A stretch of 64,000 nucleotides of DNA from Andalucia godoyi And28 (taxonomy: Eukaryota > Protista > Jakobida). Each line of letters opens with the position of its first letter. The first letter of the stretch is position 1. Under the pieces are notes generated by a model that was given only the letters and a program-made list of their open reading frames with translations, did no database searches and was not told the origin of the DNA. The stretch is from contig VRVR01000055.1 of assembly GCA_009859145.1 (NCBI GenBank), forward strand, positions 84,062-148,061, read 5' to 3'. Below, piece by piece: positions 1 to 15,109 of the stretch. Made by a program: the position numbers and the translations under genes.

Positions 1-360
1 CTGCGACAAATTACCAAGCGACGGCGGAATCGATCCCGTCAACTGGTTAGAATCCAAGTACAAGATCTGAAGCTGCGACAAATTACCAAGCGACGGCGGA
101 ATCGATCCCGTCAACTGGTTGTAATCCAAATACAACTGCTGAAGTTGCGACAGATTACCAAGCGACGGCGGAATCGATCCCGTCAACTGGTTAGAATCCA
201 AGTACAAGATCTGAAGCTGCGACAAATTACCAAGCGACGGCGGAATCGATCCCGTCAACTGGTTGGAATACAAGTACAAGAACTGAAGCTGCGACAGATT
301 GCCGAGGGACGCAGGAATCGATCCCGTCAACTGGTTGGAATCCAAATACAACTGCTGAAG
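1..360 (-). repeat. Tandem array of five near-identical 72-bp units (one 24-aa LRR each)
   Basis: Units start at 1, 73, 145, 217 and 289, with a more diverged sixth at 361. The core cgacggcggaatcgatcccgtcaactggtt is identical in units 1-4 and partly changed in unit 5. Most differences fall in the last ~24 nt of each unit (plus strand). Confidence 0.95.
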
Positions 361-1206
361 GTGCGATAGATTCCCAAGTGAAGCGGAAATTGTGCCAATT
401 AGATTGTTTGAACGTAAATGGATATAAACAATGTTCCCAAGTGAATCACAATTGTATCCGTCAAGCGGAATAGAGCAGCATGCATTGGAAAATTGCAGGG
501 GCAAAGACGGTCCCCAATTGATCGGATACCAGTTCGGACCACCTGTACTCGCATATAGATCAACAAGCACGGCACAGTCTGGTGCATACGAAACAGAGCT
601 GAAAGAACGAACAGAAACACCCAGAGCCAAGCCATCGTCATCGTTCACAGAAAGTAGACTACGAGTTCGACGAGCTTCAGCACGACGAAAACTCAGCTTT
701 TGATGCATTTTCTTTCCAACAAATGGTTGTCCAATCAGGTTCACGGCTGACTCAAGATGGATCGATTGAGCAAACATCGACTTGTGCAAACTGTCATCTG
801 AACGACTCGTCGAAGAATCTTGCTCACTAGGAAACGCACCTTTAGGAATAACGGTCACACCATCCCTTTCCGATCGCTGAAGCCGACTGATTAGCCCGGT
901 AGCAAACCCAAAGATGCTGTCTTCTACCGTTCCAAGCATCGCTGCATCGAAATGCCGTTCCAACTCTTCCCACCAGCTTGCATTTCTCACAGTTGCGAGC
1001 AACATCCACCGTGTCGAATCCGAGGACAAATCCACATGACGTCCAAAGCTATCCCGCAAAAGTTGCTGTTTGAGCGGCAACACAACACTGGGAGGAAGCA
1101 ATCCGATTCTTCCCTCAAAAACAATCTTTGTGGGAGTGCAGCAAACCAGGCAGCAAGTTGATGACAACAGAAACAAGAAAAAAAGACCGAGGGAGGCAGC
1201 GAACAT
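1..1206 (-). CDS. LRR receptor-like protein, paralog 1 (5' part; continues beyond the left edge of the window)
   Basis: Manual translation of the minus strand from ATG at 1206 is open to base 1 (missed by the ORF track because there is no stop). It gives signal peptide MFAASLGLFFLFLLSSTCCLVCC, the motifs GRIGLL, VRNASWW and VEDSIFG shared with the paralogs at 5741 and 15109, the cap APDCAVLVDLYASTGGPNW..ACC..C, then LRRs LQxLYLxxNQLTGSIPxSLGNLSQ. Confidence 0.9.
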   Translation of the reverse strand, partial: MFAASLGLFFLFLLSSTCCLVCCTPTKIVFEGRIGLLPPSVVLPLKQQLLRDSFGRHVDLSSDSTRWMLLATVRNASWWEELERHFDAAMLGTVEDSIFGFATGLISRLQRSERDGVTVIPKGAFPSEQDSSTSRSDDSLHKSMFAQSIHLESAVNLIGQPFVGKKMHQKLSFRRAEARRTRSLLSVNDDDGLALGVSVRSFSSVSYAPDCAVLVDLYASTGGPNWYPINWGPSLPLQFSNACCSIPLDGYNCDSLGNIVYIHLRSNNLIGTISASLGNLSHLQQLYLDSNQLTGSIPASLGNLSQLQFLYLYSNQLTGSIPPSLGNLSQLQILYLDSNQLTGSIPPSLGNLSQLQQLYLDYNQLTGSIPPSLGNLSQLQILYLDSNQLTGSIPPSLGNLSQ

Positions 1207-1377
1207 CACGAAATGAATGTGGGAAAACTACGATTGAAGAAATTTTTATAAACTGATTCGGCTTTTGCGAAGTTTAAAGGTTGCACACCCAGCGCATCTC
1301 AAGCAGACAAGGAGGGGGGAGGGGGGGAGCTTGGAAATTGCAAACGAGGCGGTCCTGGAATCAGGACTACTGCCCCA

Positions 1378-3541
1378 CAGGGACACGCCGGTTAACCTAA
1401 CCGAGCCAAATCCGGTTATTGGTTAACAACCGGTTAACAACCGGTTAAAATCCTGGCATAATGCAATCTGGGCGGAGATAATCGATCCCAGCGACTTGCA
1501 GCATTTTATTTCCATTTCCTCCAATGTTTTTATTTTATTTTTTGATGATGTCAGTATTGTTTCTTTTTCAGCTTTGTCATCTCTTTTGAAACAATTCTTC
1601 CAATGGTTGTTTTGTCTGCTGAAAGAAAGCAAGCTCTGGTTGCGCTTCTCGCTTCTGAGGGGTACAAGACCGTGGAGAATTGCCGTTCATGGGTAGGACC
1701 GTATTTCATGATCGATGCCGATAAAAAGCATGCACGATGCCTCCTCTGCGCGCATGAAGACAAAATTTATCGAATTCGATTCCAGACATCGAATTGTGCA
1801 TATCATCTACAGCACTCTCATGGACTGCCCCTCCCTTCCGAAACGTCGGTTTCCGGTCCTTCGACGGTGTCTAGTTTGCCCTCCCTATTCGAGCGGATGC
1901 GAAAGAACGAAGTGCAGCGAAAGACACTGCTCGCTTTAGCTTTTGCTGAGGGACGCCTTTGTTACAGCATTCTACGTGTACCTTCTGTCAGGAAAGCTTT
2001 TGGCATAAGTGTTTCAGAGCATACTATGAAAAAAGAAATTCGCAAGCTGGCAGCTGAAGTTCGTTCTGAAGTACTTCAACGCATCAAGAACAGTTATGCA
2101 GCTTGTCTCATGTGTGATTCTACACAAGCTGATAATACAACCGGATCTTGGTTGAACTTTTGTGTGGTGTACGGAAAGCAGTCGTTTTTCTTCAAGGGAC
2201 TTCTATGGACAGAATCGCTTACCGGGGATAGAATCTGTGAGCTACTGCGGCAGGTTGTGGAAGAGATTGAAAGTAGTGCTAGAGTTATTGTTGTTTCGTT
2301 TTGCTCGGATAACGGTTCCAATTTTGTTAGCGGCATTGAGGGGTATATAGCGCAGTATCGTCCATGGGCGTTCTTCGTCCGATGTGCTGCGCATTCTATC
2401 CAACTCATTGTGAAAGACGCCATTTCACAACAGCTGCCTGACATAATGCAGCAGATGGCAGCGTCTCTTGCACCCTTTCGGCAACAGCAGGTTCAAAAGA
2501 TGTTTCGAACTGTCCAGGAAATGCAGCCGGCGACGACAGCGCTGAGAATTATTAAACCCGTTGAAGTTCGGTGGAACTCTTTTTACGATGCAGCAAGGCG
2601 TATTCTGGACCGCTGGCCCGCATATGTAAGCGCCGTGAGTGGTACTACTGTTGCTGGTCAGTTTTGTACCGAAACGTGGAAGAATAAGTTGACCGCCTTC
2701 TGCACCGCAATGAAGCCATTTGCTGCTGCCACCGATGCAGTTCAAGCAGATGCTTTCCAGGTGATTTCCTTATGGGACGTTATGTCTAAAGCCGGTAGCG
2801 AAGTGGTAGAGATTGCACGTTCCACGGAAGATTCCTTGACTCGCGAAATCTGCATCGCACTTAAGAATGCATATTGCTCGCGTTGGCATTCAAACTTGAA
2901 TCATTCGCATTTGTCGACTATCCTCACTTTTTTGGATCCTGGAAAGCGGCGGACGCTGAACATCCAACGATTGCAGATGGATTCCCGCTCCAAATTTGTC
3001 AGTTTTTGTCTTGGATTCATTCTTAAGAAAGAGTCCCCATCATCGACTGAAGTTGCCGTTCGTACAACCGCAATATCTTTGCAAATCGAACGCGAGTTGG
3101 GAGATTATACCTTGTCTGCTAATGTATTCTCCCATCTACGTTCTTTCGAAACAGATTTCATTACTTACTGGACCGCTGCTCTTAACCGTGATTTGCTTAT
3201 TGCTGGTGCGGTATTGGCTATGGCTGATATTGCATGCACTCAGGCAGATGTTGAACGTACTTTTTCCGTCGAAGGACAGCTTGTTGATGGAAGACATAAC
3301 ATTTCATTTGAATTGTTGGAATGCGAAATGACGATCCGATTAAATGCACGGCATGTATTGGGGGATGTCATGGAATCCCTGAAGCGGGACACTGCAGAAA
3401 TGAGTTCTTCTTCACTCAGCGGAGACGAAGAGGTACAGGAATAAAACATTATTGAGTTCTCATTACATACATAGGTTTTGGTGATTACAATGACATATCA
3501 GATAAAATAATTACAACAATTGCATATTATAATGATACATA
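1378..3541 (+). mobile_element. hAT-superfamily DNA transposon (left end tentative, right end not found)
   Basis: Contains the hAT transposase ORF. The putative left end CAGGGACACGCC at 1378 is followed by clustered subterminal motifs (ggttaac/accggtt, 11-bp ccggttaacaa repeats, 1389-1447). No matching right TIR or 8-bp TSD was seen. Confidence 0.6.
1603..3444 (+). CDS. hAT transposase with N-terminal BED zinc finger
   Basis: BED-like W..F....ARCLLC...TSNCAYHLQHSH; catalytic-type motifs CDST, SDNGSN, RCAAH (CxxH), RWNS; C-terminal dimerisation motif ACTQADVERTFS. The 613-aa ORF is uninterrupted. Confidence 0.9.
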   Translation: MVVLSAERKQALVALLASEGYKTVENCRSWVGPYFMIDADKKHARCLLCAHEDKIYRIRFQTSNCAYHLQHSHGLPLPSETSVSGPSTVSSLPSLFERMRKNEVQRKTLLALAFAEGRLCYSILRVPSVRKAFGISVSEHTMKKEIRKLAAEVRSEVLQRIKNSYAACLMCDSTQADNTTGSWLNFCVVYGKQSFFFKGLLWTESLTGDRICELLRQVVEEIESSARVIVVSFCSDNGSNFVSGIEGYIAQYRPWAFFVRCAAHSIQLIVKDAISQQLPDIMQQMAASLAPFRQQQVQKMFRTVQEMQPATTALRIIKPVEVRWNSFYDAARRILDRWPAYVSAVSGTTVAGQFCTETWKNKLTAFCTAMKPFAAATDAVQADAFQVISLWDVMSKAGSEVVEIARSTEDSLTREICIALKNAYCSRWHSNLNHSHLSTILTFLDPGKRRTLNIQRLQMDSRSKFVSFCLGFILKKESPSSTEVAVRTTAISLQIERELGDYTLSANVFSHLRSFETDFITYWTAALNRDLLIAGAVLAMADIACTQADVERTFSVEGQLVDGRHNISFELLECEMTIRLNARHVLGDVMESLKRDTAEMSSSSLSGDEEVQE

Positions 3542-3543
3542 TA

Positions 3544-5297
3544 ACCCTTTCCCGGGCCTAGTTGTCCCGCTTGTACGGCAGTCATGAGGCGAGCAAACAG
3601 TCAAATTCAGAAAACCTCTGGTTCTATTTCAGCGAATTCCGGCATTTTCAGTTCTGTTTTTAGCCTCCTTCTCTCCCTCCACATTTTTTTGGGCGCCATA
3701 CAAAACTCCACAGCAATGCTTTCCTTTTCATGCACCCCTTGATGGGGTTGTTTTCCTTTTGTAAAGACGACTGCAGGAATATGGAGACCACCTTGCCAAG
3801 CAATTCCAATGTCCTTCGTGTTTCGGAGGACAACCGTCATCCGGAGAATGATACGCAGATCGTTGCACGTAGAAATGTGTCTCCAAATCGTCCTTCCAAG
3901 TATCGAAAATACACCCTGGAACAGAGACAGAGGGTGTGCGAACTTTATGAAGACGGCGATGATATGACAAAAGTGGACACAATCTTGAATGTCAACCCAA
4001 AGACTGCATCGGAATGGATCCGAAAGTACGAGCACACAGGAGAGTGTGCGCCTCACCAGCGGGGCGGTGCCCGACGATGCATCATTGATGAGCTCATGGG
4101 CAAAGAAATCGAGACATTCTTTGCAGAGCACAGTGCTGCTACTCTCGATCAGTGCGAGGCATATTTGGCGACGAAGTTCTCGGAGACCATTCTCGACTCC
4201 AATGGAAATGCAGTGCGGAAGGAAACCAGACCGATACCAAAGCCCACAACGATCTGTGATTATGTGAACAAGCACGGCCTGTGCTTTAAGATTGCGAAGG
4301 TCATCGTGCCACAACAACAACAACCGGATGACCAATTGATCGAAAAACGAAGAGCGTACGCCGAATGGTTCTGCCACCTTCCACTACGTGCGCAATCACG
4401 AGTTGTGTTTGTTGACGAATTCTACGTGGACTATCGGTTGCATCGCTCAAAGGCTCGGGGTGCCACCGGTGTAAAGCCACGTGTGCTCATCCCAGCCAAA
4501 CAGAACGTGAAGCTGAATATCGTGGCCGCGGTCTCTGCCGATCTCGGTGTTGTTTTGTACAAGACGTACGCGGCACGTGATCTGAAACAGTTCACGAAAG
4601 AGAAACGACGCAAGAATGGTGAAAACAAGGAAAATGAAGAAATTCGCTCTTCAGTGTCCACTGCAGCTGCTGGTGATGATTCTGTGCGAGGAACCACCGG
4701 ACAACTGTTCCAAAGCTATTTGATGGAATTGAAAGCAAAGCTCATGAAGAACGGAGACGATGACCGATTCGTGATTTTCGACAACTACCGGACACATGCA
4801 GACAAATTCACGCTTCCTGCTTTCGAAGGATCGCGTCTGGTGCCGCATTTTCTTCCTCCGTGGTCTCCATTTTTGAATCCAATCGAGAATGTCATCGGAC
4901 ATGTGAAAGGAGTGATACGTACCGCGTGGGCAATGCTGTCTACGAGTATTGAGCAAGTGGCATCTCATGAGTTGCAGCCATATGAAAAACTCGCGCAAGC
5001 AAGAGAGAGAATTCTTCGAGAAATTCTGGATGACGCATTTCATGCAGTATCCGTGGAAGCTGTAAGCTCGTACGCTGAGAAGTCTCGTTCATATTTGCCG
5101 GATTTATTGCAGAAGAAACCAATAACAAACTGGGACTGACACAACCAGTGCCAGCAGCATTTCCAATAAAAAACCTTCGTAACCAGGTGGCTGAAAAGCA
5201 GTCCAACGAGCTGAAGTTGAAAATTGGAAAAACTGTAAATTCAGGACACTTGGCTTGTATGAGCAGAAGATGTCCTGGATGTGGCTCGGGAAAGGGT
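3544..5297 (+). mobile_element. IS630/Tc1-mariner DNA transposon with 15-bp TIRs and TA target duplication
   Basis: Left TIR ACCCTTTCCCGGGCC (3544-3558); right TIR reverse complement ACCCTTTCCCGAGCC (5283-5297), 14/15 match. TA flanks at 3542-3543 and 5298-5299. Confidence 0.88.
3730..5139 (+). CDS. IS630/Tc1-type DD34E transposase
   Basis: N-terminal HTH (YTLEQRQRV...VNPKTASEWIRKY); VFVDE, IFDNYRTH and LPPWSPFLNPIE with 34 residues between D2 and E (counted). The start could be the downstream Met at 3781. Confidence 0.92.
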   Translation: MHPLMGLFSFCKDDCRNMETTLPSNSNVLRVSEDNRHPENDTQIVARRNVSPNRPSKYRKYTLEQRQRVCELYEDGDDMTKVDTILNVNPKTASEWIRKYEHTGECAPHQRGGARRCIIDELMGKEIETFFAEHSAATLDQCEAYLATKFSETILDSNGNAVRKETRPIPKPTTICDYVNKHGLCFKIAKVIVPQQQQPDDQLIEKRRAYAEWFCHLPLRAQSRVVFVDEFYVDYRLHRSKARGATGVKPRVLIPAKQNVKLNIVAAVSADLGVVLYKTYAARDLKQFTKEKRRKNGENKENEEIRSSVSTAAAGDDSVRGTTGQLFQSYLMELKAKLMKNGDDDRFVIFDNYRTHADKFTLPAFEGSRLVPHFLPPWSPFLNPIENVIGHVKGVIRTAWAMLSTSIEQVASHELQPYEKLAQARERILREILDDAFHAVSVEAVSSYAEKSRSYLPDLLQKKPITNWD

Positions 5298-5740: not shown

Positions 5741-8700
5741 ATGAAGCAAGCATTGTTGTTTACATTTATTTTGTGCTTGCTTTACGTTCTTGGTCTCGTC
5801 TTTGGACAAAATCGCTCGGCAGCAATTCACAGCTTTCGCGGCAGAATCGGCCTTCTTTCTCCCGCGATCGCAGGCCCTGTCAAGCTCAAAGTTGCCGCTC
5901 AGTTGTCGTGCTCATTGTCCACGGATGCGGAACCAAATGCGTGCATTTTGGCGAGAACGGTCTGGAACTCGTCGTGGTGGGAAGGGGTAGTGCAACTGCT
6001 GGACTCTGCGACCATTCGCTTGGTTGAGGATAGCGTGATTGGACATGTTCACGGATTATTGGACTCAATGGCCACCATGCACAATGTTGCGGTCAACGAT
6101 GGCAATGCTGTGGATGTTCCGAACCACACATTTCCCGAAGTACCAATGGCAACACAATCAACAGCCAAACCAAGGTACAGAGCGAGATCTCGCAGATCGA
6201 CTGCAGCGGGGTATGAAAGTGTCCTTCCAAAGGCTTCACAACGACGGATGGACACAGCAAGTCGGCGGACCCCCTGGAAGGATGTTTCACAGAAATGGAG
6301 AATCAATAACGAGCATCCTCTGCGCAAAAATCGGAAGTTCGAGGTTGTGAGAATGGATGCCAGAGAGCATGTGGCGCTGTCTGCACCATCTTATGAACCG
6401 GATTGCAAAGTGCTGATGGACTTGTACGACTTCACATCTGGCCCTCAGTGGAGTCCTTTCAACTGGGGAAGCCCACTGCCCTCGAATTTTTCCACCGCGT
6501 GCTGTTCGTTGAACCTGGGAGGCATTTTCTGTGAACCTGGAACAGGAAGGGTTCTCGAAATCCTCCTTTCTAGTAATGGGCTTGTGGGAACGATCCCCCC
6601 ATCTCTTGGCAATCTTGCACAACTTGAGGAATTGTGGTTAGACGGAAACTCATTGACTGGGGCTATTCCCTCTTCTCTGGGGAACCTGTCATCGCTTGAA
6701 GTGTTGGTACTGTTTTTGAATCAGCTGACGGGGTCCATTCCGGAATCATTGGGAAACTTGTCGTCGCTTGTAGCCATGGATCTTGATTCGAATTCATTAA
6801 CGGGAGAGATCCCGAATTCGATAGGAAAACTTGTCAAACTCACTTTTCTTGCTTTGTTTTCGAATCAGTTGACTGGGCGCATCCCGTCCAGCCTTGGAAA
6901 CTTGAAAGGCCTCCAGAGCCTGCAGTTAGCGGAAAACCGATTGACAGGATCCATTCCGAATTGGATCGGGGGTCTTCTAAACTTACAGGACCTACGATTC
7001 GAGGCAAACGATTTGAGTGGTTCTATCCCCGATTCCCTGGGCAATTTGTCTGAGCTGCAAGTGCTGGTTTTGGTGGGTAACAGATTCACCGGTCCGATTC
7101 CAGCATCTTTAGGAAGCCTGTCTTCTTTGAAAACATTAGAATTGTGTCCGAACGGACTGACCGGATCCATTCCTTCTACGTTTTCGCGATTAACAGCACT
7201 CCAGCGTTTGCAGTTTGATTCCTGTGGCTTGACGGGGCAGGTGCCAGATTTGTTTCGTTCGATGTCAGATCTTGAGCTACTGACACTTTCTACGAACAAT
7301 TTCGAAGGCAAGCTTCCCGATTCATTGCAATTTCTTCAAGACTTGCGATACTTGGATGTTAGCGCCAACAATTTCGACGGTCCCATTCCGTCGTTCATCG
7401 GCCAGCTCGGCCAATTGCAGACCTTGGACCTTCATGGAAACAAGTTTAGTGGTCCTATTCCTGTTTCCATCGGGAATCTATCTCAGTTACATTATCTTGA
7501 TTTGCACTCGAATCACTTCGAATCCGCGATTCCGGACATTATTGGGTCGCTCTCTCAGCTACTAACATTGGATTTGTCGTCAAACAACCTGGTAGGTACC
7601 ATTCCGAGCAGTATTGGAAGCCTGACTCTGCTTACTTCGCTGAGCTTGCATGCAAACCTGTTACAGGGTTTTCTTCCGGATTCGCTGGGAAATCTTGCGG
7701 ATTTGCAGTTTCTTGATCTCAGTGTGAACAATATTTCTGGTTCGTTTTCGTGCTTCAGCTTGCCTCCGAACATTCAGTCTCTGAACTTGCAGAACAACCA
7801 ATTGTTTGGAGCCATTCCCCAATGCATTTGTAATGTGCAGTCATTGAGTTTTTTGTATTTGGGAGTCAACCATTTCTCTGCGTTTCCTGATTGCTCGACA
7901 CCTTCACTTTCGTTGCTGGATTTGTCGAGCAACAACATTTCATTCTTCCCATTTGATCGAATTGTCGAATTCCAGTCGCTGAAATCGCTCGATCTTAGCA
8001 ACAATGTCCTTCATGGCAAGTTTCCATTGAATGTCTTTCTTGGAGGATTGCGGCTTTCGTCGCTCTCTCTTGCTTACAATAATTATGAGGATGCTTTACC
8101 CATATATGGGTGCAGTTTCTGGAATGGAGATCAAGTCATGACTGTCAATGGTTCCACCGGTCTGGAAGTTGTGGACCTTTCTGGGAACACAATTACGGGC
8201 ATTCCTGGGTTGTACGACGTCACCACAGGAAAACCCTGTGGATTCCCGGGGTATCCTTCGCTGTCAGTACTCTCCCTACAACACGTGGCTGCACCTTCTC
8301 TGTTTCCTGGTTCGGTTGTGAATCTGGCCGGTTCTCAAGGTTTCTTTCCTTACCCTTCGTTCTCGCTCTTGGACATATCTCGTATTGCTCCTGGCTTGGT
8401 CTCTGTTGATGTTTCGCACAACGATTTGGATGCACACCTCGACTATGCGCTGTCCTTGCCTTTGCTGGTCGCGCTGGATTTGTCACACAATCGGATCGCT
8501 CGATTGTCGAGTCTTCCTGAAGCAGACAAAAGGCGGTTTTCGTACGATCCGACGACGTTCTATGCATATAGTGTACAGATGACTTGTCTTCAAGCGCTAG
8601 TGGATGGTGACACACAATTCCAGGCAGATCCGTCCTTCTTCGACTATGAGAATTGTGTGTGTCGATTGGGGTACTTTGGGAAACCGCCGAACTGTTCGAC

Positions 8701-10108
8701 GTGTCCCGAAAATGCGGATTGTTCCCTGACGTTTGACAGGGACTCACAGTTCCTGGATATGGAGAAGGCATACATGTCCAGCGGCAACATCGTTGCGCAA
8801 CCGGGCTTCTACGCATCGCCACCTGTGACCTACAAGGAGATGGCAAACAACCAGGCGTACCCCACTGCGATTGAGATTTGCGATCAGGCAGGCACTCCGT
8901 TGACCCCGTGCCAGGCCGATACCAGTCGGAGGTGCATTTCTGGGTATGAAGGCAGACTGTGCGCACGGTGCACTTCCGGTTACTTTCGTGCTGGCGATCG
9001 ATGTCACGAATGTCCGGATGATATTGTCATCTATGGAATCGTTTTGGTCATTGTCGCCATCTGCATCGTTGCGTGGGCGTTCTTCGTTGGCCCTTCATCC
9101 TCCGGTGCTGTCAAGATTCTCGTCTTCTTCTGGCAATCGTTTCTGTTCATTCGAGCTCCGATGCCCACCAATCTGTATCTGTTCACTCACAATACGTCGT
9201 CTTCGACAACGCTGAGCTTTGCGGGACCTGAGTGCGTGTTTGCAAACTGGGGATACCGTGCGCAGTACATCTTCTCCGTCGTTGCGCCCTTTGGTGCCTT
9301 GGCGATCGTGGGACTCATTTGGGTTCTTGGTCGCATATGTGGAGTGCCTCCGTCGCAACGGACTGCGTGGCTGGATCGATGCCGCCGAGCAGGCATCTTC
9401 TTGTTCTTGCTGTTGTACATGCCCGCCGTGTCTGCGGTCTTTGCACCTCTGTCATGCACAAAGGATCCTGGGAATGGAGAACGGTACATCCAGTTCAATC
9501 CAGCAGAACGCTGCTCATCCGCTCTTCAGGCGAACTCGTGGGTGCTGCTGCTGGTGTACTGCTTTGGCGTGCCCGGGTTCTTTGGCTACCGATTGTGGAA
9601 GACAAGGGTTCTGTGGTCCAGTTCTGGCAGTGACCCGCGAGCTCGTTATGTGTACGGGATACTGGTTGGATCGTTTCGGGAGGGACGTTTGTGGTGGGAA
9701 TTTGTTGTCACCATGCGCCGCATCGTTCTGGTTGCTGCGTACGTGTTGATCCCTCGATTGTCGGAGTATCTCACCCTGCTTGTGGTGCTCTTGTTTGTTT
9801 CGGCGTCGGGCGCGCAGGCAGTTGCTGTTCCGTACGGACGGAGCATTGACAACTGGGCCGAGATCGTGTCGCTCGGGCTTCTGCTGGTGAACTTGGTTTG
9901 CTCGGTCCAGTCACAGGTGCTTGGCGTATATGATGTCGATGACGCGGGTACGCTCGTCTTTGTGCTGAACATCTTGTTTTCTGCAACCCTCGTAGCGATG
10001 CTTCTTCACACGTGGCTGCGCAAGTTTCAAAGATTCCGTCAGCGAATCAGCGGCAAGTCGAACCTGGCAGCCTCCCTCTTAAACGACGAATCCGCCGAGT
10101 CTTTGTAA
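5741..10108 (+). CDS. LRR receptor-like multi-pass membrane protein, paralog 2
   Basis: The likely start is ATG 5741 (signal peptide MKQALLFTFILCLLYVLGLVFG), inside the 5588 ORF. About 17 plant-type 24-aa LRRs plus about 5 capping LRRs, a Cys-rich stalk (CVCRLGYFGKPPNCSTCP; GYEGRLCARC) and about 8-9 hydrophobic segments (KILVFFWQ; YG.L..SFR..R.WWE.V...RR). No kinase domain. Confidence 0.92.
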   Translation: MKQALLFTFILCLLYVLGLVFGQNRSAAIHSFRGRIGLLSPAIAGPVKLKVAAQLSCSLSTDAEPNACILARTVWNSSWWEGVVQLLDSATIRLVEDSVIGHVHGLLDSMATMHNVAVNDGNAVDVPNHTFPEVPMATQSTAKPRYRARSRRSTAAGYESVLPKASQRRMDTASRRTPWKDVSQKWRINNEHPLRKNRKFEVVRMDAREHVALSAPSYEPDCKVLMDLYDFTSGPQWSPFNWGSPLPSNFSTACCSLNLGGIFCEPGTGRVLEILLSSNGLVGTIPPSLGNLAQLEELWLDGNSLTGAIPSSLGNLSSLEVLVLFLNQLTGSIPESLGNLSSLVAMDLDSNSLTGEIPNSIGKLVKLTFLALFSNQLTGRIPSSLGNLKGLQSLQLAENRLTGSIPNWIGGLLNLQDLRFEANDLSGSIPDSLGNLSELQVLVLVGNRFTGPIPASLGSLSSLKTLELCPNGLTGSIPSTFSRLTALQRLQFDSCGLTGQVPDLFRSMSDLELLTLSTNNFEGKLPDSLQFLQDLRYLDVSANNFDGPIPSFIGQLGQLQTLDLHGNKFSGPIPVSIGNLSQLHYLDLHSNHFESAIPDIIGSLSQLLTLDLSSNNLVGTIPSSIGSLTLLTSLSLHANLLQGFLPDSLGNLADLQFLDLSVNNISGSFSCFSLPPNIQSLNLQNNQLFGAIPQCICNVQSLSFLYLGVNHFSAFPDCSTPSLSLLDLSSNNISFFPFDRIVEFQSLKSLDLSNNVLHGKFPLNVFLGGLRLSSLSLAYNNYEDALPIYGCSFWNGDQVMTVNGSTGLEVVDLSGNTITGIPGLYDVTTGKPCGFPGYPSLSVLSLQHVAAPSLFPGSVVNLAGSQGFFPYPSFSLLDISRIAPGLVSVDVSHNDLDAHLDYALSLPLLVALDLSHNRIARLSSLPEADKRRFSYDPTTFYAYSVQMTCLQALVDGDTQFQADPSFFDYENCVCRLGYFGKPPNCSTCPENADCSLTFDRDSQFLDMEKAYMSSGNIVAQPGFYASPPVTYKEMANNQAYPTAIEICDQAGTPLTPCQADTSRRCISGYEGRLCARCTSGYFRAGDRCHECPDDIVIYGIVLVIVAICIVAWAFFVGPSSSGAVKILVFFWQSFLFIRAPMPTNLYLFTHNTSSSTTLSFAGPECVFANWGYRAQYIFSVVAPFGALAIVGLIWVLGRICGVPPSQRTAWLDRCRRAGIFLFLLLYMPAVSAVFAPLSCTKDPGNGERYIQFNPAERCSSALQANSWVLLLVYCFGVPGFFGYRLWKTRVLWSSSGSDPRARYVYGILVGSFREGRLWWEFVVTMRRIVLVAAYVLIPRLSEYLTLLVVLLFVSASGAQAVAVPYGRSIDNWAEIVSLGLLLVNLVCSVQSQVLGVYDVDDAGTLVFVLNILFSATLVAMLLHTWLRKFQRFRQRISGKSNLAASLLNDESAESL

Positions 10109-10486: not shown

Positions 10487-13400
10487 TCAAAGTTCGGCAT
10501 CATCCGTCTGCAGCAATCGTTCCTGGAGGTTATCCAGCGATATCTGCCTATCTCGCTGTCGCCACCGAGCGGCAAATTGGAACAAGAGCATGCTAACAAT
10601 GGACAACGAAAACGCAACATTCAGCAGAAATACAATTGTACCGGCCCCAACAACATCTTGCACACCAAGGACTTGCGATTGAACGGAGCAGACCAGATTC
10701 ACAAGAAGCAGTCCCAGAGACGTGATCTCCACGGCGTTTTCGAGATTTCGACGATAGGGAGAGGCGACAGACTGCAAAATCGCCGCTATCACCAAAACGC
10801 CTGCGACCAGCATCGTGCGATGTTCGGACAATCGCGGAATCGTCACGTACGCGACCACGAAGAGGATACGACGAATGGTGATCACCAACTCCCACCACCT
10901 TCGGTTATCCTTGTAGGACCCAAAGAGAAGGGAATAGACGTACATCCGTCTCGTGTCTGGTTTCACATTCTTTGACAGAACGCCGCTTCGCCACACAAAG
11001 AAGGACAGAGAACCCGGAACAAGGATCGCATAGATCAAGAGAACACCCGAAGACACTGCTTGCATCAACGGTAAACACTGTTGGTCGGGATAGAACAGCA
11101 TGTACTTCTTTCCGTCCCCGGGATCCGTTGCGCAAGATAATGGAGCGAGAACGGTAGAGATTGCAGACATGAACAGAAAAACGTAAAGGAAAATGGCAGA
11201 ACGCCGACATCGGTCAATCCACAATTTCCATGCTGATCTTGGCAGTCTTCTGATAAAGATCCAGGCCATTCCAAACATCCACAGAAGACCAACAATCAGA
11301 ACAGCAAAGATGGGGGCAGTCACCGTGAACGTGTAATTCGTGTAGTAATCCCAATGTTTGAAAAAGCATTCTGGTCCAGCAACGCTCAGCATAGATGTGG
11401 TCGAAACGCTGTTGGAGAAAACATACAAGGACTGCGACATGGGGGCGCGAATGAAGAACAGAGCTTGCCAAAAGAACACAATAACTTTGACAAGGCCAGA
11501 AGACGAGGAACCAACAAAGAATGACCACAACAGTAAAGAAAGAGCGACAAGAAAAACGACAGCTGCAAAAATGATGAGACCTTCGGAACTCGGACATTCG
11601 ATGCATCTCTCACCGGCCCGAAAATTTCCAGGTGAACAGCCTGCGCATAATCTCCCCTCGTATCCTGCTTTGCATGGTCGATCTTGCGTTGCCTGGCAGG
11701 GTGTCAGATCGGTACCGGACTGTGCACAGATTTCAATGGACTTTGGATACGATTCGTTATTCATCATTTGGAGCCAGGTAACCGGAGGCGAAGCGTAGTA
11801 CCCAGGGTCGGCAAGGACGTTTCCGCTCTGCGCATACGCCAACGACATGTTTCCAAAAGGAATTTGCGCTTCATCTTGAAACGAGCATTCTGCATTGGCC
11901 ATGCATCTCTGGCAATTTGGTGGTTTGCCGTAATATCCCGATCGGCATACACAATTCTCGTAATCAAAGAAAGATGGATCGGCTTGAAAAATAAGATAAT
12001 GGTCGACAACAGATTGTAAGCAGGTCATATTCGTGCTATACGGATAGCTTGTCGACGGAACAAATGAGAACCGTTGCTGGTTGGTAATAGAAAGCATCCA
12101 TCTTCGAGCATGAGGATTGCTCCGGACGTCGAATTCCGACAACAGAGAAAGCGATAGCACGAAATCCAAATGCACAGATAGATCATTCGAGGAAACATCC
12201 AACGACACGAGACCGGGCAGGTACGGGAGGAAATCGAAAAAAGACAGTGGTGGAAAATTACAAAAAACATTCACAAGACCGTAAGGAGAATACGCAAAAC
12301 TCGGAAAGGTCGCACCAAAGGAGACGTTTTCAAGCTTCAAATCGGTCAAGGAGGGGTATCCCAATCCGACGCACATTTCACAATTCCTTGTGGAGTAGTC
12401 CACGACACCCGGCAGCCCAAGAATAACATTTCCAGAAAGATCGAGCGATTCAAGTCCTGAAATGCCATTGACAAGAACAATAGTATGGGTCTCATCAGGT
12501 ACCAAGTAATTGCAAGCGAAGATGGGAAATTCATCGACGAAGCTGTTGAAGGCAAGAGACAATGATCGAAGAGGAAGTCCGCCAAGGAAAACGTTGACAG
12601 GAAAAAGACTGCCTAGATGGTTATGACTCAAATCTAGCGAAGTCATTGACGAAAAGCTGGAAATCAGATCGAAAGGAAAGGAGGAGATTTGATTGTTCGA
12701 TAAATCCATCTGAATCACCGACGGAAGAGAACAATTCGGAAAGGATTGAAACATGTTGCTGCCCATATACACGAAAGTGAGATCACGCTGGGTGCAGAAG
12801 CAGTCCGGGATTGCTCCGGAAAGACCATTTCCTTGGAAATTCAATGAGGTAAGACTGGACCCAATCGAGTCGCATGAAATGGGTCCAGATAGTTGATTAT
12901 AGCTCAAATCCACAGACTGCAGTTTCGACAATTTCCCCAGAGAATCAGGAATCGGACCGGAGAGTTGATTGCTATGCAGATCCAAATAGAGCAAGTTCGA
13001 CAGACCACCGATTGTCGAAACAATTGGGCCGGAAAGCTGATTGGAGTTCAAATACAGTGTCTTCAATCGAGAATTCTTGTTCAGTGATGCCGGTAGTGTA
13101 CCATTCAACAAGTTGGACGATAAGTCCAAGTACTCAAGACGGGATAAATCACTCAAAGTGGACGGAAGGGGACCACTCAATTGATTGGATGACAAATCCA
13201 GATGCACAAGAGCAGAAAGCGAGCCCAAGGAAGAAGGAACTGAACCAGACAACTGGTTGGAATACAATTGCAATTCTTCAAGCAGCCTCAGATTTCCCAG
13301 TGATTCCGGAATAGTTCCGTTCAACAGATTAGAAGAGAGATCCATTGCAAGAAGCTGTGAAAGCATACCGAGTGATTCTGGTATGTCTCCAATAAGACGA

Positions 13401-15109
13401 TTCGAAGAAAGATACAGAGAAACCAATTGCGACAATAGGCGCAGGGAATTCGGAATTGATCCAGTTAATTGGTTTGCAGAAAGATCCAGTGTGTGAAGCT
13501 GTGATAAATTTCCAAGAGATTCGGGAATCTCGTCACTGAATTGATTCGACGACAGCGATAACAGCGTAAGTTGGCGTAAGCAACCAAGGGAATCCTGTAT
13601 CCGTCCACAGAGTTGATTGGAAGACAGGTCTACAAGCGTGAGTTTGAGCAAATTACCAAGCGATGAAGGAAGCTGTCCAGTCAGTTGATTCCGATGCAGA
13701 TACAGTTCTGTGAGATTCAACAAATTTCCGAGAGAGTGTGGAATCTCACCAGTCATATGATTGTCATACAGAGCAAGTATCTCAAGATGTGTTAGATTGC
13801 CTAATGATGCTGGAATTGGTCCAGTGAGATGATTGGCAAAGGCAATCAAAACACGAAGCTTGGAAAGCATTCCAAACGTCTCAGGAATGGATCCGGAAAA
13901 TTGATTAACGTATAATTCCAACACTTCGAGTTTGGACAAGCGACCCAGAGACGCTGGGATCTGACCAGTAAGTTGATTCCTTTGGAGCGAAAGTTCAACA
14001 AGCAAAGTTAAGTTGCTGATTGACGCGGGAATCTCTCCTGAAAGTTCATTTGAAGAAAGATCCAGCTGCAAAAGACGTGAAAGGTTACCCAGAGATGCTG
14101 GAACTGATCCACTGAACTGATTATCATGCAATAGCAGACTCGTGAGCTGCACCAGATTTCCGAGTGACACGGGAATCGATCCGTTCAAAAGGTTTGAATT
14201 CAACTCCAACTCTGACAAGTGGGACAGTTTTCCTAGAAAAACCGGAATAGGACCAGTAAAATTATTGAATGACAACACCAGCTTTCGAAGCTTCGACAAC
14301 AGTCCTAACGAAACAGGGATTCCTCCATGCAAGTTGTTATTCTGCAACTGGATATCGCGAAGATCCTCCAGTTGACTCAGTGACTCTGGAAGGGACCCGT
14401 CCAGCTGATTGGCGCTTAAATCAAGGCTCGTAATCCTTCCTGAAGCACTGTCACACGTAAATCCACCAAGACCCAGCGAGCAGCAATCTTTCGAAAAGTC
14501 CGAAGGCAACGGGTCGCCCCAGAACAACGGTCGCCAAGTGCGGCCACTGGTATTCGTATACAAATCAACGAGTACAGCACAGTCTGGCGCGTGAGAGACG
14601 GCATCGAACGAACGCGCTGGAGCTGACTGTACCGACTTTGAAAGTAGTCTCACAACGTTGTTTCTCATGTCGACAGAATGGACGAAACGTTGTGAACCAA
14701 CAGATTCCGATGCTGATTTGAGATAGGAATCAAAACCACTCGTCTTTGACGATTTCACAGAATATTGGGTGTTTGAAGAAGATTTCTCGTTCAGCGGAAT
14801 GGACAAATGATCAATCAATCCGAAAACGTGACCAAAGACACTATCTTCAAACAATTCAAAGGTTGCGGAGTTCAACTGCAACTGAAAAGCAGACCACCAG
14901 GTGATATTTCGAATGGTAGAATCAAGCACCGAACCAACAGAAACCGAGGGCGACGACGCATAGACCGGCGGCCCACCAAACACTTTCGTTTTAAGCGGTT
15001 TCAAAACATCTTGAGGAAGCAGTCCGATTCTTCCCGAGTACACTGGACCACACGCAACAAATTTGAACAAAACAAAGGCAAACACAACCAAGACTGATAG
15101 ACGCAGCAT
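10487..15109 (-). CDS. LRR receptor-like multi-pass membrane protein, paralog 3
   Basis: Same architecture as 5741..10108 and convergent with it. About 22 array LRRs plus about 5 capping LRRs. Shares the blocks FQADPSFFDYENCVCR, GYEGRLC and LLLVNLVCSVQSQVLGV. Confidence 0.93.
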   Translation of the reverse strand: MLRLSVLVVFAFVLFKFVACGPVYSGRIGLLPQDVLKPLKTKVFGGPPVYASSPSVSVGSVLDSTIRNITWWSAFQLQLNSATFELFEDSVFGHVFGLIDHLSIPLNEKSSSNTQYSVKSSKTSGFDSYLKSASESVGSQRFVHSVDMRNNVVRLLSKSVQSAPARSFDAVSHAPDCAVLVDLYTNTSGRTWRPLFWGDPLPSDFSKDCCSLGLGGFTCDSASGRITSLDLSANQLDGSLPESLSQLEDLRDIQLQNNNLHGGIPVSLGLLSKLRKLVLSFNNFTGPIPVFLGKLSHLSELELNSNLLNGSIPVSLGNLVQLTSLLLHDNQFSGSVPASLGNLSRLLQLDLSSNELSGEIPASISNLTLLVELSLQRNQLTGQIPASLGRLSKLEVLELYVNQFSGSIPETFGMLSKLRVLIAFANHLTGPIPASLGNLTHLEILALYDNHMTGEIPHSLGNLLNLTELYLHRNQLTGQLPSSLGNLLKLTLVDLSSNQLCGRIQDSLGCLRQLTLLSLSSNQFSDEIPESLGNLSQLHTLDLSANQLTGSIPNSLRLLSQLVSLYLSSNRLIGDIPESLGMLSQLLAMDLSSNLLNGTIPESLGNLRLLEELQLYSNQLSGSVPSSLGSLSALVHLDLSSNQLSGPLPSTLSDLSRLEYLDLSSNLLNGTLPASLNKNSRLKTLYLNSNQLSGPIVSTIGGLSNLLYLDLHSNQLSGPIPDSLGKLSKLQSVDLSYNQLSGPISCDSIGSSLTSLNFQGNGLSGAIPDCFCTQRDLTFVYMGSNMFQSFPNCSLPSVIQMDLSNNQISSFPFDLISSFSSMTSLDLSHNHLGSLFPVNVFLGGLPLRSLSLAFNSFVDEFPIFACNYLVPDETHTIVLVNGISGLESLDLSGNVILGLPGVVDYSTRNCEMCVGLGYPSLTDLKLENVSFGATFPSFAYSPYGLVNVFCNFPPLSFFDFLPYLPGLVSLDVSSNDLSVHLDFVLSLSLLSEFDVRSNPHARRWMLSITNQQRFSFVPSTSYPYSTNMTCLQSVVDHYLIFQADPSFFDYENCVCRSGYYGKPPNCQRCMANAECSFQDEAQIPFGNMSLAYAQSGNVLADPGYYASPPVTWLQMMNNESYPKSIEICAQSGTDLTPCQATQDRPCKAGYEGRLCAGCSPGNFRAGERCIECPSSEGLIIFAAVVFLVALSLLLWSFFVGSSSSGLVKVIVFFWQALFFIRAPMSQSLYVFSNSVSTTSMLSVAGPECFFKHWDYYTNYTFTVTAPIFAVLIVGLLWMFGMAWIFIRRLPRSAWKLWIDRCRRSAIFLYVFLFMSAISTVLAPLSCATDPGDGKKYMLFYPDQQCLPLMQAVSSGVLLIYAILVPGSLSFFVWRSGVLSKNVKPDTRRMYVYSLLFGSYKDNRRWWELVITIRRILFVVAYVTIPRLSEHRTMLVAGVLVIAAILQSVASPYRRNLENAVEITSLGLLLVNLVCSVQSQVLGVQDVVGAGTIVFLLNVAFSLSIVSMLLFQFAARWRQRDRQISLDNLQERLLQTDDAEL

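What the first reader, a model, noticed from the sequence alone, without database searches (positions are those of the whole stretch)
1..15109. Clustered family of kinase-less LRR / Cys-rich / multi-TM receptors with variable LRR number
Seen: three paralogs in 15 kb share caps, stalk and TM block but differ in array length (about 17 vs 22 LRRs in the complete copies). The cytoplasmic tail is very short and has no kinase. The TM block has the pattern YGxL..Y/F..xxWWE.V...RR...PY...N..E, reminiscent of the FLC/TRP-like and GPCR-like multi-TM domains of protists. Inference: an uncharacterised recognition-receptor family (prey, microbe or self recognition) that signals through the membrane domain itself.
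Basis: partly seen in the sequence, partly recalled or inferred. Interest (0 to 1): 0.7.

Follow-up and report, generated by a model that had tools for sequence, protein, structure and literature searches.

The report
LRR receptors on a Pkd2/Flc-like membrane domain
A free-living flagellate (Andalucia godoyi) carries a large, fast-diversifying gene family that joins a plant-style leucine-rich-repeat 'sensor' to a nine-helix membrane domain distantly related to the fungal Pkd2/Flc putative calcium channels, an undescribed receptor design that also occurs in several other distant protist lineages.

Summary
Window 1-15109 contains two intact, intron-less genes (A, 5741-10108 +, 1455 aa; B, 10487-15109 -, 1540 aa) and the 5' part of a third (C, 1-1206 -). 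All share a signal peptide, an N-domain, an LRR cap and 24-residue plant-type LRRs. A and B also share a Cys-rich stalk, a nine-helix membrane block and a tail of about 20-30 residues with no kinase. B has five more LRRs than A.

The DNA is Andalucia godoyi, a jakobid, and at least 18 further paralogs exist there. No Pfam model matches the membrane block of A or B directly. However:
- the consensus of a 48-sequence family profile hits PF06011 (fungal 'TRP-like' Pkd2/Flc) above its gathering score;
- ten individual distant members (of about 110 proteins scanned) hit PF06011 collinearly just below threshold;
- a confident AlphaFold model (pLDDT 91) matches a giant-virus protein named as a TRP ion channel, and nothing in the PDB. 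It is not a GPCR and not a canonical 6-TM TRP.

A profile of the block finds 10,539 clusters with many different ectodomains. LRR-bearing members occur in Stygiella, Diphylleia, Gefionella, Rhodelphis and Thecamoeba.

Receptor or channel function remains inferred. I rate it a new variant of a known kind.

The parts
1..1206 (-). Copy C, 5' part only (402 aa visible): signal peptide, N-domain, linker, LRR N-cap and six near-identical 24-aa LRRs. The gene runs off the left edge of the window.
   Evidence: Translation. Alignment with A and B. A 72-bp tandem array at 1-378 with 88% matches; 196-nt reference unit, overlapping copies 72 bp apart, 86-92% identical.
5741..10108 (+). Gene A, complete and without introns, 1455 aa: signal peptide, N-domain, linker, LRR N-cap, about 16-17 regular LRRs, irregular LRRs with C-cap, Cys-rich stalk, 9-TM block, short tail.
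   Evidence: ORF. Identical to database protein P0019 from EukProt. Pfam LRR_1, LRR_8 and LRR_14 hits and no kinase.
6557..7780 (+). Gene A: regular 24-residue LRR array, consensus LxxLxxLxLxxNxLTGxIPxSxGx.
   Evidence: Regex and repeat-HMM counts. Per-position entropy.
8615..8995 (+). Gene A: Cys-rich stalk (FQADPSFFDYENCVC...GYEGRLCARC..GYFR.GDRCHECP), ending in a DUF7630 / ephrin-receptor-like module just before TM1.
   Evidence: DUF7630 at E 1.3e-4. The family consensus reaches 29.1 bits against a gathering score of 27. Weak match to the EphA2 Cys-rich region in the PDB.
8996..10048 (+). Gene A: nine-helix membrane block, a divergent PF06011-like domain.
   Evidence: hmmsearch with profile A2 matches aa 1086-1436. 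51% identical to B over the block.
10487..15109 (-). Gene B, complete and without introns, 1540 aa. Same architecture as A with five more LRRs. Convergent with A, 378 bp between the two stop codons.
   Evidence: ORF. Pfam hits. Alignment.
12803..14431 (-). Gene B: regular 24-residue LRR array (21-23 repeats). Its closest solved relatives are plant LRR-RLK ectodomains.
   Evidence: Repeat HMM. PDB sequence search: GSO1 E 8e-159, FLS2 2.6e-137, MIK2 2.4e-123.
11612..11992 (-). Gene B: Cys-rich stalk, the most conserved segment between A and B (63% identity).
10538..11611 (-). Gene B: nine-helix membrane block. Topology is N-terminus outside, C-terminus inside. Conserved Cys residues lie in the TM2-3 and TM4-5 outer loops. 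The WWE...RR motif lies at the cytoplasmic start of TM6.
   Evidence: AlphaFold model m4cde556fd19a, pLDDT 91.1, pTM 0.86. Conserved columns. BFVD fold match.
10490..10537 (-). Gene B: end of the cytoplasmic tail (the tail totals about 20-30 residues after TM9). Acidic C-terminus with a conserved L..LL motif and no recognisable domain.
24459..24944 (-). Decayed relic of a fourth copy. Only the TM6-TM9 region and tail remain, with two in-frame stops and one frameshift.
   Evidence: tblastn at E 6e-32. hmmsearch at E 2.7e-11. Three-frame translation.

Best explanation
**What it is (shown).** Region 1-15109 holds three members, one cut by the window edge, of an Andalucia godoyi gene family with at least 21 members. 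Each encodes a large secretory-pathway membrane protein built from these parts, in order:
- a signal peptide and an N-domain of about 100 aa of unknown fold;
- a variable linker;
- a plant-type 24-residue LRR solenoid;
- irregular LRRs with a C-cap;
- a disulphide-rich stalk (DUF7630 / ephrin-receptor-like);
- a nine-helix membrane domain, which is a divergent branch of the PF06011 superfamily (fungal 'TRP-like' proteins Pkd2, Flc1-3);
- a short tail of about 20-30 residues without any enzyme domain.

The ectodomain faces outside or into a lumen. The conserved WWE...RR motif sits at the cytoplasmic face.

**How it most likely works (inferred).** The LRR solenoid binds an external ligand or particle, such as a bacterial surface, substrate or partner cell. 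Binding, or the pulling force on the bound ectodomain, passes through the rigid stalk to the nine-helix domain. That domain then acts as the output by letting cations, probably Ca2+, through, as reconstituted fission-yeast Pkd2 does when the membrane is stretched. Ca2+ would then drive the feeding, motility or adhesion response. No kinase would be needed.

**How the family evolves.** It diversifies by duplication, gain and loss of LRR units, and gene decay.
For: **Organism and family size**
- P0019 is gene A, held under EukProt.
- Named paralogs are ANDGO_00366, 01672, 01823, 01900, 02991, 03677, 04360, 04723, 06887, 06923, 07004, 07424, 07451, 07458, 07724, 07771, 07793 and 08004.

**Architecture**
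- LRR Pfam hits and no kinase.
- 24-residue consensus LxxLxxLxLxxNxLxGxIPxSLGx.
- Best solved relatives are the plant GSO1, FLS2 and MIK2 ectodomains, with E-values down to 8e-159.
- 12-16 N-glycosylation sequons and 26 Cys in each ectodomain.

**Membrane block**
- AlphaFold model with pLDDT 91.1 and pTM 0.86, showing nine long helices.
- The consensus of the 48-sequence profile hits PF06011 at 34.1 bits, above the gathering score of 28.5, with E 1.8e-8, over profile positions 144-403 of 426.
- Distant members hit PF06011 at E 6.6e-7 to 5.6e-4. Between them the hits cover profile positions 140-407, in collinear order.
- The top BFVD fold match is a Megaviridae 'Transient receptor potential ion channel': E 2.9e-5, probability 1.0, TM-score 0.55/0.51 over 379 columns.

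**Published properties of PF06011 proteins**
- Pkd2 has a signal peptide, an extracellular domain, nine TM helices and a cytoplasmic tail (bioRxiv 10.1101/2022.08.11.503631).
- Reconstituted Pkd2 passes Ca2+ on membrane stretch (PMC9727806).

**Signalling context in the superfamily**
- Other members carry cytoplasmic EF-hand, cNMP-binding, WW, SH3 and GYF domains.

**Diversification**
- A and B are only about 50% identical, and B has five more LRRs.
- Regular LRR counts range from 7 to 23 across paralogs.
- Copy C has a 72-bp LRR tandem array with 88% matches; overlapping copies of the 196-nt reference unit are 86-92% identical.
- A relic copy carries stops and a frameshift.

**Wide distribution**
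- The same LRR, DUF7630 and TM-block architecture occurs in Stygiella, Diphylleia, Gefionella, Rhodelphis and Thecamoeba.
- These cluster together in a rough NJ tree.
Against: - Neither window protein reaches PF06011 on its own: no hit at E up to 10. The jakobid-only consensus gives only E 0.007. The link therefore rests on family profiles, transitive hits and a predicted-versus-predicted fold match.
- No PF06011 protein has a solved structure, and the PDB search found nothing. Pore, gate and oligomeric state are all unknown.
- Channel activity in the superfamily is shown only for Pkd2. The yeast Flc proteins are described as ER flavin-transport and Ca2+-homeostasis factors (PMC9600462).
- No ligand, location or expression data exist for these genes.
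- One paralog, ANDGO_01900, is named 'conserved mitochondrial ...' in NCBI.
- Selection on the LRR surface could not be measured, because no orthologous DNA was available.
Confidence: 0.5

Rival explanations
1. These are pure adhesion molecules. The LRR ectodomain sticks the cell to substrate, prey or partner cells. The nine-helix block is only a sturdy anchor that links to the cortex, as proposed for Dictyostelium SadA (signal peptide, EGF repeats, nine TM helices). There is no ion conduction.
For: - SadA has the same architecture class, and its loss abolishes substrate adhesion and impairs phagocytosis (PMC2173991).
- Protein B matches Pfam LRR_ComC, a Dictyostelium EGF/LRR membrane-protein model, at 34.9 bits against a gathering score of 27.
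- Ectodomains across the superfamily are typical adhesion modules: Ephrin_rec_like, C-type lectin, FG-GAP, CUB, fn3 and kringle.
Against: - An anchor would not need about 350 residues with invariant polar and charged residues (W, E, R, P, D) conserved across thousands of clusters.
- Relatives carry EF-hand and cNMP-binding tails, which fit regulated signalling.
- Homology of SadA's membrane part to this block was not tested.
Confidence: 0.2
2. These are intracellular transport or homeostasis proteins of the ER, vacuole or mitochondrion, like yeast Flc1-3 (flavin carrier, Ca2+ homeostasis). The LRR part would face a lumen, with no role in recognising external things.
For: - PF06011 members Flc1-3 and part of the Pkd2 pool are at the ER (PMC9600462; abstracts listed).
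- Paralog ANDGO_01900 is named 'conserved mitochondrial LRR_4 and EGF_Lam domain-containing protein' in NCBI.
Against: - A housekeeping transporter is not expected to exist in 21 or more copies that are 30-87% identical with 7-23 LRRs, or to leave relic copies.
- The ectodomains look like extracellular receptor LRRs, with caps, sequons and 26 Cys.
- The mitochondrial label came from a targeting-signal-based survey. The genome paper's main text has no LRR, leucine or EGF terms, and its supplementary files hold none of ANDGO_01900, LRR_4 or EGF_Lam.
- The N-terminus reads as a hydrophobic signal peptide.
Confidence: 0.1
3. These are GPCR-like receptors. The membrane block is a seven-helix G-protein-coupled core with extra helices.
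For: The weak, non-significant top Foldseek hits of the first, low-confidence model were GPCRs. A neighbouring gene and some superfamily members carry NCD3G, a class C GPCR ectodomain module.
Against: - With the confident model, no GPCR aligns better than TM-score 0.17 or E-value 1.
- There are nine helices, not seven.
- No 7tm Pfam family is hit apart from a noise-level Frizzled match at E 0.63.
- PF06011 is the only consistent match.
Confidence: 0.03

Closest known systems
Fungal 'TRP-like' PF06011 proteins: S. pombe Pkd2, Trp663, Trp1322; S. cerevisiae Flc1-3; C. neoformans Flc1
   Same: - The layout matches: signal peptide, extracellular or lumenal N-terminal domain, nine-helix membrane domain of about 350-400 aa, and a cytoplasmic tail (one search compared).
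- The family consensus passes the PF06011 gathering score.
- The fold matches a PF06011-named viral protein.
   Different: - The N-terminal domain is an ML-like / Ig-fold lipid-binding domain in fungi, but a 900-1100-aa LRR solenoid with a Cys-rich stalk here.
- Sequence identity is too low for the window proteins to hit the model individually.
- Fungi have 2-4 copies per genome; A. godoyi has 21 or more.
- The tail is short here and about 135 aa in Pkd2.
Plant LRR receptor kinases and receptor-like proteins (GSO1, FLS2, MIK2, PEPR1, RLPs)
   Same: The same 24-residue 'plant-specific' LRR class with Cys-pair caps. These are the best PDB sequence matches, with E down to 8e-159. Plant RLPs likewise lack a kinase. 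LRR number varies and the genes are clustered.
   Different: The plant proteins are single-pass with a kinase or a short tail, and need co-receptors. These proteins have a nine-helix domain instead and no kinase. The similarity lies in the repeat type and is not evidence of orthology.
Dictyostelium SadA (and ComC-type EGF/LRR membrane proteins)
   Same: A signal peptide, a Cys-rich or EGF-like ectodomain, nine predicted TM helices and a short tail, in a protist phagotroph, with a role in adhesion and phagocytosis. The LRR_ComC Pfam model matches B.
   Different: SadA has EGF repeats rather than an LRR solenoid. Whether its membrane part is homologous to this block could not be tested here, because the sequence was not obtainable with these tools.
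Animal polycystins and canonical TRP channels (PKD2, TRPML)
   Same: They share the name only ('TRP', 'Pkd2') and the idea of a large ectodomain coupled to a cation channel. One distant superfamily member has a C-terminal EF-hand.
   Different: Canonical TRPs are six-TM tetramers. There is no Pfam or PDB match, and no polycystin or TRP chain appears among the 50 best rows listed. Published identity of Flc1 to human TRPML1 and PKD2 is 1-2%.

Membership tests
PF06011 'TRP' (fungal Pkd2/Flc-like) superfamily | Match to the Pfam PF06011 model at or above its gathering score (28.5 bits) | tested here: inconclusive
   - Window proteins A and B: no hit even at E up to 10.
- Jakobid-only consensus: 15.6 bits, E 0.007.
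- Consensus of the 48-sequence family profile: 34.1 bits, E 1.8e-8.
- Ten individual distant members: about 19-29 bits (from listed scores and the best E-value), most or all below the gathering score, collinear.
PF06011 'TRP' (fungal Pkd2/Flc-like) superfamily | Nine transmembrane helices, N-terminal domain outside, C-terminus cytoplasmic | tested here: met
   The AlphaFold model (pLDDT 91) has nine long helices. Conserved Cys pairs lie in the loops on the ectodomain side and basic loops lie on the other side. Pkd2 is described the same way.
PF06011 'TRP' (fungal Pkd2/Flc-like) superfamily | Fold similarity to a protein annotated as PF06011 / TRP-like | tested here: met
   BFVD A0A5J6VHI1, 'Transient receptor potential ion channel' [Megaviridae]: E 2.9e-5, probability 1.0, TM-score 0.55/0.51. 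Both structures are predictions. The fungal models themselves were not available.
PF06011 'TRP' (fungal Pkd2/Flc-like) superfamily | N-terminal ML-like / TRP_N (PF14558) lipid-binding domain | tested here: not met
   No PF14558 or PF02221 hit. The ectodomain is LRR plus Cys-rich stalk.
PF06011 'TRP' (fungal Pkd2/Flc-like) superfamily | Stretch-activated Ca2+ permeation | not testable with these tools
   Shown only for reconstituted S. pombe Pkd2 (PMC9727806).
Plant-type LRR receptor kinase / receptor-like protein | Extracellular array of 24-residue LxxLxxLxLxxNxLxGxIPxxLGx repeats with Cys caps | tested here: met
Plant-type LRR receptor kinase / receptor-like protein | Single transmembrane helix followed by a kinase (RLK) or a short tail (RLP) | tested here: not met
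   Nine helices. No Pkinase hit.
G-protein-coupled receptors | Seven-helix GPCR fold or a 7tm Pfam family | tested here: not met
   No GPCR chain is better than TM-score 0.17. There is no 7tm Pfam hit.
Canonical TRP / polycystin channels | Six-TM voltage-sensor-like plus pore fold (Ion_trans / PKD_channel) | tested here: not met
   No Pfam hit. The PDB sequence searches found none, and none appears among the 50 best fold matches listed.
Dictyostelium SadA-type adhesion receptors | Sequence or fold homology of the nine-TM part to SadA | not tested
Only the published architecture could be compared.

The most novel reading that the evidence does not exclude
The fusion of LRR, Cys-rich stalk and PF06011-like domain is an ancient, pan-eukaryotic class of 'receptor-channels'. 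It would have been present before the split of Discoba, Amoebozoa, CRuMs, malawimonads and Archaeplastida. In this class, a plant-type LRR recognition surface directly gates a nine-helix cation channel. In phagotrophic protists it would serve as the diversifying recognition repertoire for prey or microbes, an innate-immunity-like system that needs no kinase, and it would be one branch of a largely unannotated superfamily of modular ectodomain-channel sensors of more than 10,000 clusters.
Probability: 0.25. Interest if true: 0.85.

Novelty: new variant of a known kind. Interest (0 to 1): 0.6.

Why it matters
**A different output for an LRR receptor.** Cell-surface LRR receptors are known to signal through kinases (plants), TIR domains (animals) or co-receptors. 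Here the same kind of LRR solenoid is wired to a nine-helix domain related to the fungal Pkd2/Flc putative mechanosensitive Ca2+ channels. The design recurs in five or more deeply separated protist lineages.

**If the membrane domain is the output,** this would be a distinct, possibly very old way to turn extracellular recognition or adhesion force into an ion signal.

**A handle on poorly understood proteins.** The function and gating of PF06011 proteins are themselves unclear, and no structure is solved. This family offers a new angle on them.

**An annotation gap.** The membrane block defines a superfamily of more than 10,000 sequence clusters that current Pfam models do not capture at threshold. 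A dedicated model would annotate a large share of 'hypothetical' protist surface proteins.

**Prey recognition.** For A. godoyi, a 20-Mb compact genome, 21 or more copies set among transposase ORFs mark this as one of its most dynamic surface-protein families. It is a candidate for prey recognition in a bacterivore.

Tried and rejected
The exhaustive profile search was needed to see the superfamily.
- **First AlphaFold run,** with the stalk included and 20 sequences, gave pLDDT 57. Its Foldseek hits (GPCRs, MFS transporters, E above 0.3) were meaningless and were discarded.
- **PDB searches** found no relative, either by sequence with two profiles or by fold with the good model. GPCR, canonical TRP/polycystin, MFS, ABC and TMEM16 were all rejected, with TM-scores of 0.22 or less.
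- **Neighbouring gene 27405-31253.** This Cys-rich gene was tested as a possible fourth member. It has Ephrin_rec_like repeats but a single TM helix and no match to the block. P0030 has the same length by coincidence, but it is ANDGO_07724, not this ORF.
- **Source contig of gene A.** The look-up of encoding contigs has no record of gene A's product, so its position on the scaffold, subtelomeric or not, is unknown.
- **Transposon ends.** No terminal inverted repeats were found around the two transposase ORFs between C and A.
- **Literature.** No paper in the library describes an LRR protein family with nine TM helices. The A. godoyi genome paper's main text has no LRR, leucine or EGF terms, and its supplements hold none of ANDGO_01900, LRR_4 or EGF_Lam. 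The ComC literature is not held.
- **dN/dS on the LRR surface** was not attempted. A and B are too diverged (about 50% amino-acid identity), and the closest paralog, ANDGO_07458 (87%), is available only as a C-terminal protein fragment.

Full report
**1. What is in the sequence**

Region 1-15109 holds two long uninterrupted ORFs lying tail to tail.
- Gene A runs from 5741 to 10108 on the plus strand and encodes 1455 aa. The listed ORF starts further upstream, but the database protein P0019 equals the translation from the Met at 5741.
- Gene B runs from 10487 to 15109 on the minus strand and encodes 1540 aa.
- A third copy, C, begins at 1206 on the minus strand and runs off the left edge of the window, so only 402 aa are visible.

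Between C and A lie two transposase-like ORFs: 1603-3444 (DUF659, hAT-like) and 3730-5139 (DDE_3, Tc1/mariner-like).

A three-way alignment shows that all copies share:
- a hydrophobic signal peptide;
- an N-domain of about 100 aa (GRIGLLP...WW...EDSV.GHV.GL);
- a poorly conserved linker;
- a Cys-containing LRR N-cap;
- 24-residue repeats.

A and B go on to share irregular LRRs, a Cys-rich stalk, a multi-helix membrane block and a short acidic tail.

Identity between A and B by segment:

| Segment | Identity |
|---|---|
| N-domain | 36% |
| Linker | 28% |
| LRR N-cap | 56% |
| Regular LRRs | 48% |
| Irregular LRRs | 49% |
| Cys-rich stalk | 63% |
| TM block | 51% |
| Tail | 37% |

In the regular LRR segment B also has 120 extra columns, which is exactly five additional repeats.

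Pfam finds only LRR families plus a weak DUF7630 hit, and no kinase. The one caveat is that the C-terminal half of copy C lies outside the window.

**2. Organism and family size**

The closest database proteins carry ANDGO_ locus tags from the EukProt proteome of Andalucia godoyi. P0019, which is gene A itself, is held under EukProt with its name masked, as the tools do for window-encoded proteins. The window is therefore A. godoyi nuclear DNA. This fits the intron-poor, compact genome described for that species (PMC7050145).

Eighteen other paralogs were recovered by name. Many of those models are 5'-truncated. Regular-LRR counts range from 7 to 23 across the 20 models, some of them truncated.

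Three further signs of turnover were found:
- A decayed fragment of another copy lies at 24459-24944 (-). Only TM6-TM9 and the tail remain, with two in-frame stops and a frameshift.
- Copy C's LRRs form a 72-bp tandem array at the DNA level with 88% matches. Overlapping copies of the 196-nt reference unit are 86-92% identical, which suggests recent unit duplication or homogenisation.
- The 64-kb window contains four transposase ORFs.

Together these describe a birth-and-death family, not a small family under uniform constraint.

**3. The ectodomain**

The repeat consensus is LxxLxxLxLxxNxLxGxIPxSLGx. Entropy is low at the scaffold positions and high at the x positions. This is the 24-residue 'plant-specific' LRR class.

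A sequence search of the PDB with B's ectodomain returns plant receptor-kinase ectodomains first: GSO1 at 8e-159, FLS2 at 2.6e-137, then MIK2, PEPR1, RGI (RGFR) and BRI1. This is similarity of repeat class and does not show orthology.

Each ectodomain has 12-16 N-glycosylation sequons and 26 cysteines, as expected for a protein that passes through the secretory pathway.

The stalk ends in a module of about 45 residues (GYEGRLC..C..G.FR.G..C..CP) directly before TM1. For the family consensus this module reaches the DUF7630 gathering score: 29.1 bits against 27. It also weakly resembles the ephrin-receptor Cys-rich region.

**4. The membrane block**

Neither A nor B hits any Pfam model in this region, even at E up to 10.

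*Size of the superfamily.* An exhaustive profile search of 1.84 billion representative proteins found 10,539 clusters at E up to 1e-3 and 2,826 at E up to 1e-10. The block sits at the C-terminal end of proteins from about 300 to 5,900 aa.

*Diversity of partners.* Among the 39 longest top hits, 26 have LRRs. Others have Ephrin_rec_like repeats, WW, C-type lectin, NCD3G, beta-helix or FG-GAP domains. More distant members add CUB, kringle and fn3 outside the membrane, and EF-hand, cNMP-binding, SH3, WW and GYF domains on the cytoplasmic side. The block is thus a shared membrane module under many different ectodomains.

*Link to PF06011.* This rests on three results:
- Ten individual distant members, of about 110 proteins scanned, hit PF06011 ('TRP', the fungal Pkd2/Flc family) at E 6.6e-7 to 5.6e-4. 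The hits lie in collinear register and between them cover profile positions 140-407.
- The consensus of the 48-sequence profile hits PF06011 at 34.1 bits, above the gathering score of 28.5, with E 1.8e-8, over positions 144-403 of 426.
- The jakobid-only consensus hits only PF06011, weakly, at E 0.007.

*Structure prediction.* A first AlphaFold run was poor (pLDDT 57). With the 48-sequence alignment, the block of gene B was predicted at pLDDT 91.1 and pTM 0.86. The model has nine long helices, a short beta-hairpin in the TM4-TM5 loop, and a TM9 that extends into the cytoplasm.

*Topology.* The ectodomain precedes TM1. The conserved cysteines (C89, C167, C186 in block numbering) fall in loops on the ectodomain side. 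The basic loop and the YxYsLLfGSY...WWE.V...RR motif fall at the cytoplasmic start of TM6. The C-terminus is therefore cytoplasmic.

*Fold searches.*
- Against the PDB the model finds nothing: best E 0.11, and all TM-scores 0.22 or less. It is neither a GPCR nor a canonical six-TM TRP or polycystin.
- Against predicted viral structures, the top hit is a Megaviridae protein that UniProt names 'Transient receptor potential ion channel': E 2.9e-5, probability 1.0, TM-score 0.55/0.51 over 379 columns. Two more Megaviridae proteins follow it.

*Match to the published Pkd2 layout.* Fission-yeast Pkd2, a PF06011 protein, is described as a signal peptide, an extracellular domain, a 405-aa domain of nine TM helices, and a cytoplasmic tail (bioRxiv 10.1101/2022.08.11.503631). 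This is the same layout.

I conclude that the block is a divergent branch of the PF06011 superfamily.

**5. Distribution of the LRR-bearing form**

The architecture of LRR, DUF7630 and this block is not confined to Andalucia. It occurs in:
- Stygiella incarcerata, another jakobid;
- Diphylleia rotans (CRuMs);
- Gefionella okellyi (malawimonad);
- Rhodelphis marinus (Archaeplastida);
- Thecamoeba quadrilineata (Amoebozoa);
- several environmental contigs.

In a rough neighbour-joining tree of 138 blocks, the LRR-bearing sequences fall together in one half and the non-LRR forms in the other. Window genes A and B sit inside an Andalucia-specific expansion. The tree has no support values. It suggests, but does not prove, that the fusion is old.

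**6. How it most likely works**

*Shown:* the architecture, the topology, the remote homology and fold relationship to PF06011, and the size and turnover of the family.

*From published work:* reconstituted Pkd2 passes Ca2+ when the membrane is stretched, and pkd2 mutants have reduced Ca2+ spikes (PMC9727806). Fungal Flc proteins affect Ca2+ homeostasis and flavin transport (PMC9600462).

*Inferred:*
- The LRR solenoid binds something outside the cell.
- Binding or mechanical load passes through the disulphide-rich stalk to the nine-helix domain.
- That domain opens to cations.
- Ca2+ is then the signal, which would explain why no kinase and only a short tail of about 20-30 residues are present.
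- EF-hand and cyclic-nucleotide-binding tails on distant relatives fit a regulated channel or signalling module.

I put about 0.5 on this receptor-channel or mechanosensor reading.

*Main rival, about 0.2:* a SadA-like adhesion role in which the block is an anchor. SadA has the same layout with EGF repeats (PMC2173991). Its homology to this block could not be tested.

*Intracellular Flc-like transport role, about 0.1:* this is disfavoured by the copy number, the LRR variability and the receptor-like ectodomain. The 'mitochondrial' label on ANDGO_01900 most likely reflects a signal peptide scored as a targeting peptide, which is my inference. The genome paper's main text has no LRR, leucine or EGF terms, and its supplementary files hold none of ANDGO_01900, LRR_4 or EGF_Lam.

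*GPCR reading:* essentially excluded.

**7. Novelty and verdict**

No paper in the searchable library describes an LRR family with this membrane domain. Databases label the members as hypothetical proteins or, wrongly, as plant receptor kinases.

The parts are known kinds: plant-type LRR, DUF7630, and a PF06011-like domain. What appears undescribed is:
- their combination;
- its wide phylogenetic spread;
- its expansion in a compact jakobid genome;
- the existence of a superfamily of more than 10,000 clusters around the block that Pfam does not capture at threshold.

I classify it as a new variant of a known kind, with interest 0.6. Function remains untested, and the decisive experiments and computations are listed separately.

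Noticed in passing
window 46989-50480 (-): An ORF of 1163 aa with GAF, PHY, HisKA, HATPase_c and response-regulator domains. This is a phytochrome-like hybrid histidine kinase in a heterotrophic, non-photosynthetic flagellate.
   Followed up: no
window 34839-40223 (+) and 41127-46529 (+): Two adjacent ORFs of about 1800 aa, each with many predicted TM helices and a C-terminal adenylate/guanylate cyclase catalytic domain. They form a tandem pair of large membrane cyclases.
   Followed up: partly
window 27405-31253 (+): A single-pass membrane protein of 1282 aa with six Ephrin_rec_like repeats, NCD3G and TNFR_ELAPOR1 hits, and internal 147-bp and 111-bp tandem repeats. It shares the Cys-rich repeat type seen in other members of the TM-block superfamily but lacks the block itself.
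   Followed up: yes
window 1603-3444 (+), 3730-5139 (+), 16023-18152 (+), 33044-34360 (+): Four transposase-like ORFs in 64 kb of a compact 20-Mb genome: one hAT-like (DUF659), one DDE_3 (Tc1/mariner-like) and two DDE_1 (pogo-like). No terminal inverted repeats were found around the first two. The region may be a transposon-rich, fast-evolving part of the genome.
   Followed up: partly
window 24459-24944 (-): A pseudogene relic of the last four membrane helices and tail of a fourth family member, with two stop codons and a frameshift.
   Followed up: yes
BFVD entries A0A5J6VHI1, A0A5J6VI06, A0A5J6VLW6 (not in the window): Environmental Megaviridae genomes encode proteins with the same nine-helix fold (TM-score 0.41-0.64), so giant viruses of protists carry PF06011-like membrane proteins.
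   Followed up: no
window 10490-10537 (-) and 10049-10105 (+); tails of paralogs: The short cytoplasmic tails end in a conserved L..(S/E)(L/F)L motif followed by acidic residues (ERLLQTDDAEL, ASLLNDESAESL, ESFLEQNGTL, SSLLADKELDDV). This may be a sorting signal.
   Followed up: no
NCBI KAF0852326.1 = ANDGO_01900 (paralog, not in the window): One family member is named 'conserved mitochondrial leucine-rich repeat (LRR_4) and EGF_Lam domain-containing protein'. Other paralogs are auto-named as plant receptor kinases (GSO1, MIK2, MSL1) although they have no kinase. These are likely annotation errors.
   Followed up: partly
L001 1531-3141 and 3814-7794 (JGI metagenome contig Ga0456364_0006116): An environmental homologue with the LRR and TM-block architecture (P0026, 1326 aa) is also a single uninterrupted ORF. 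It sits next to a VWA-domain gene.
   Followed up: no
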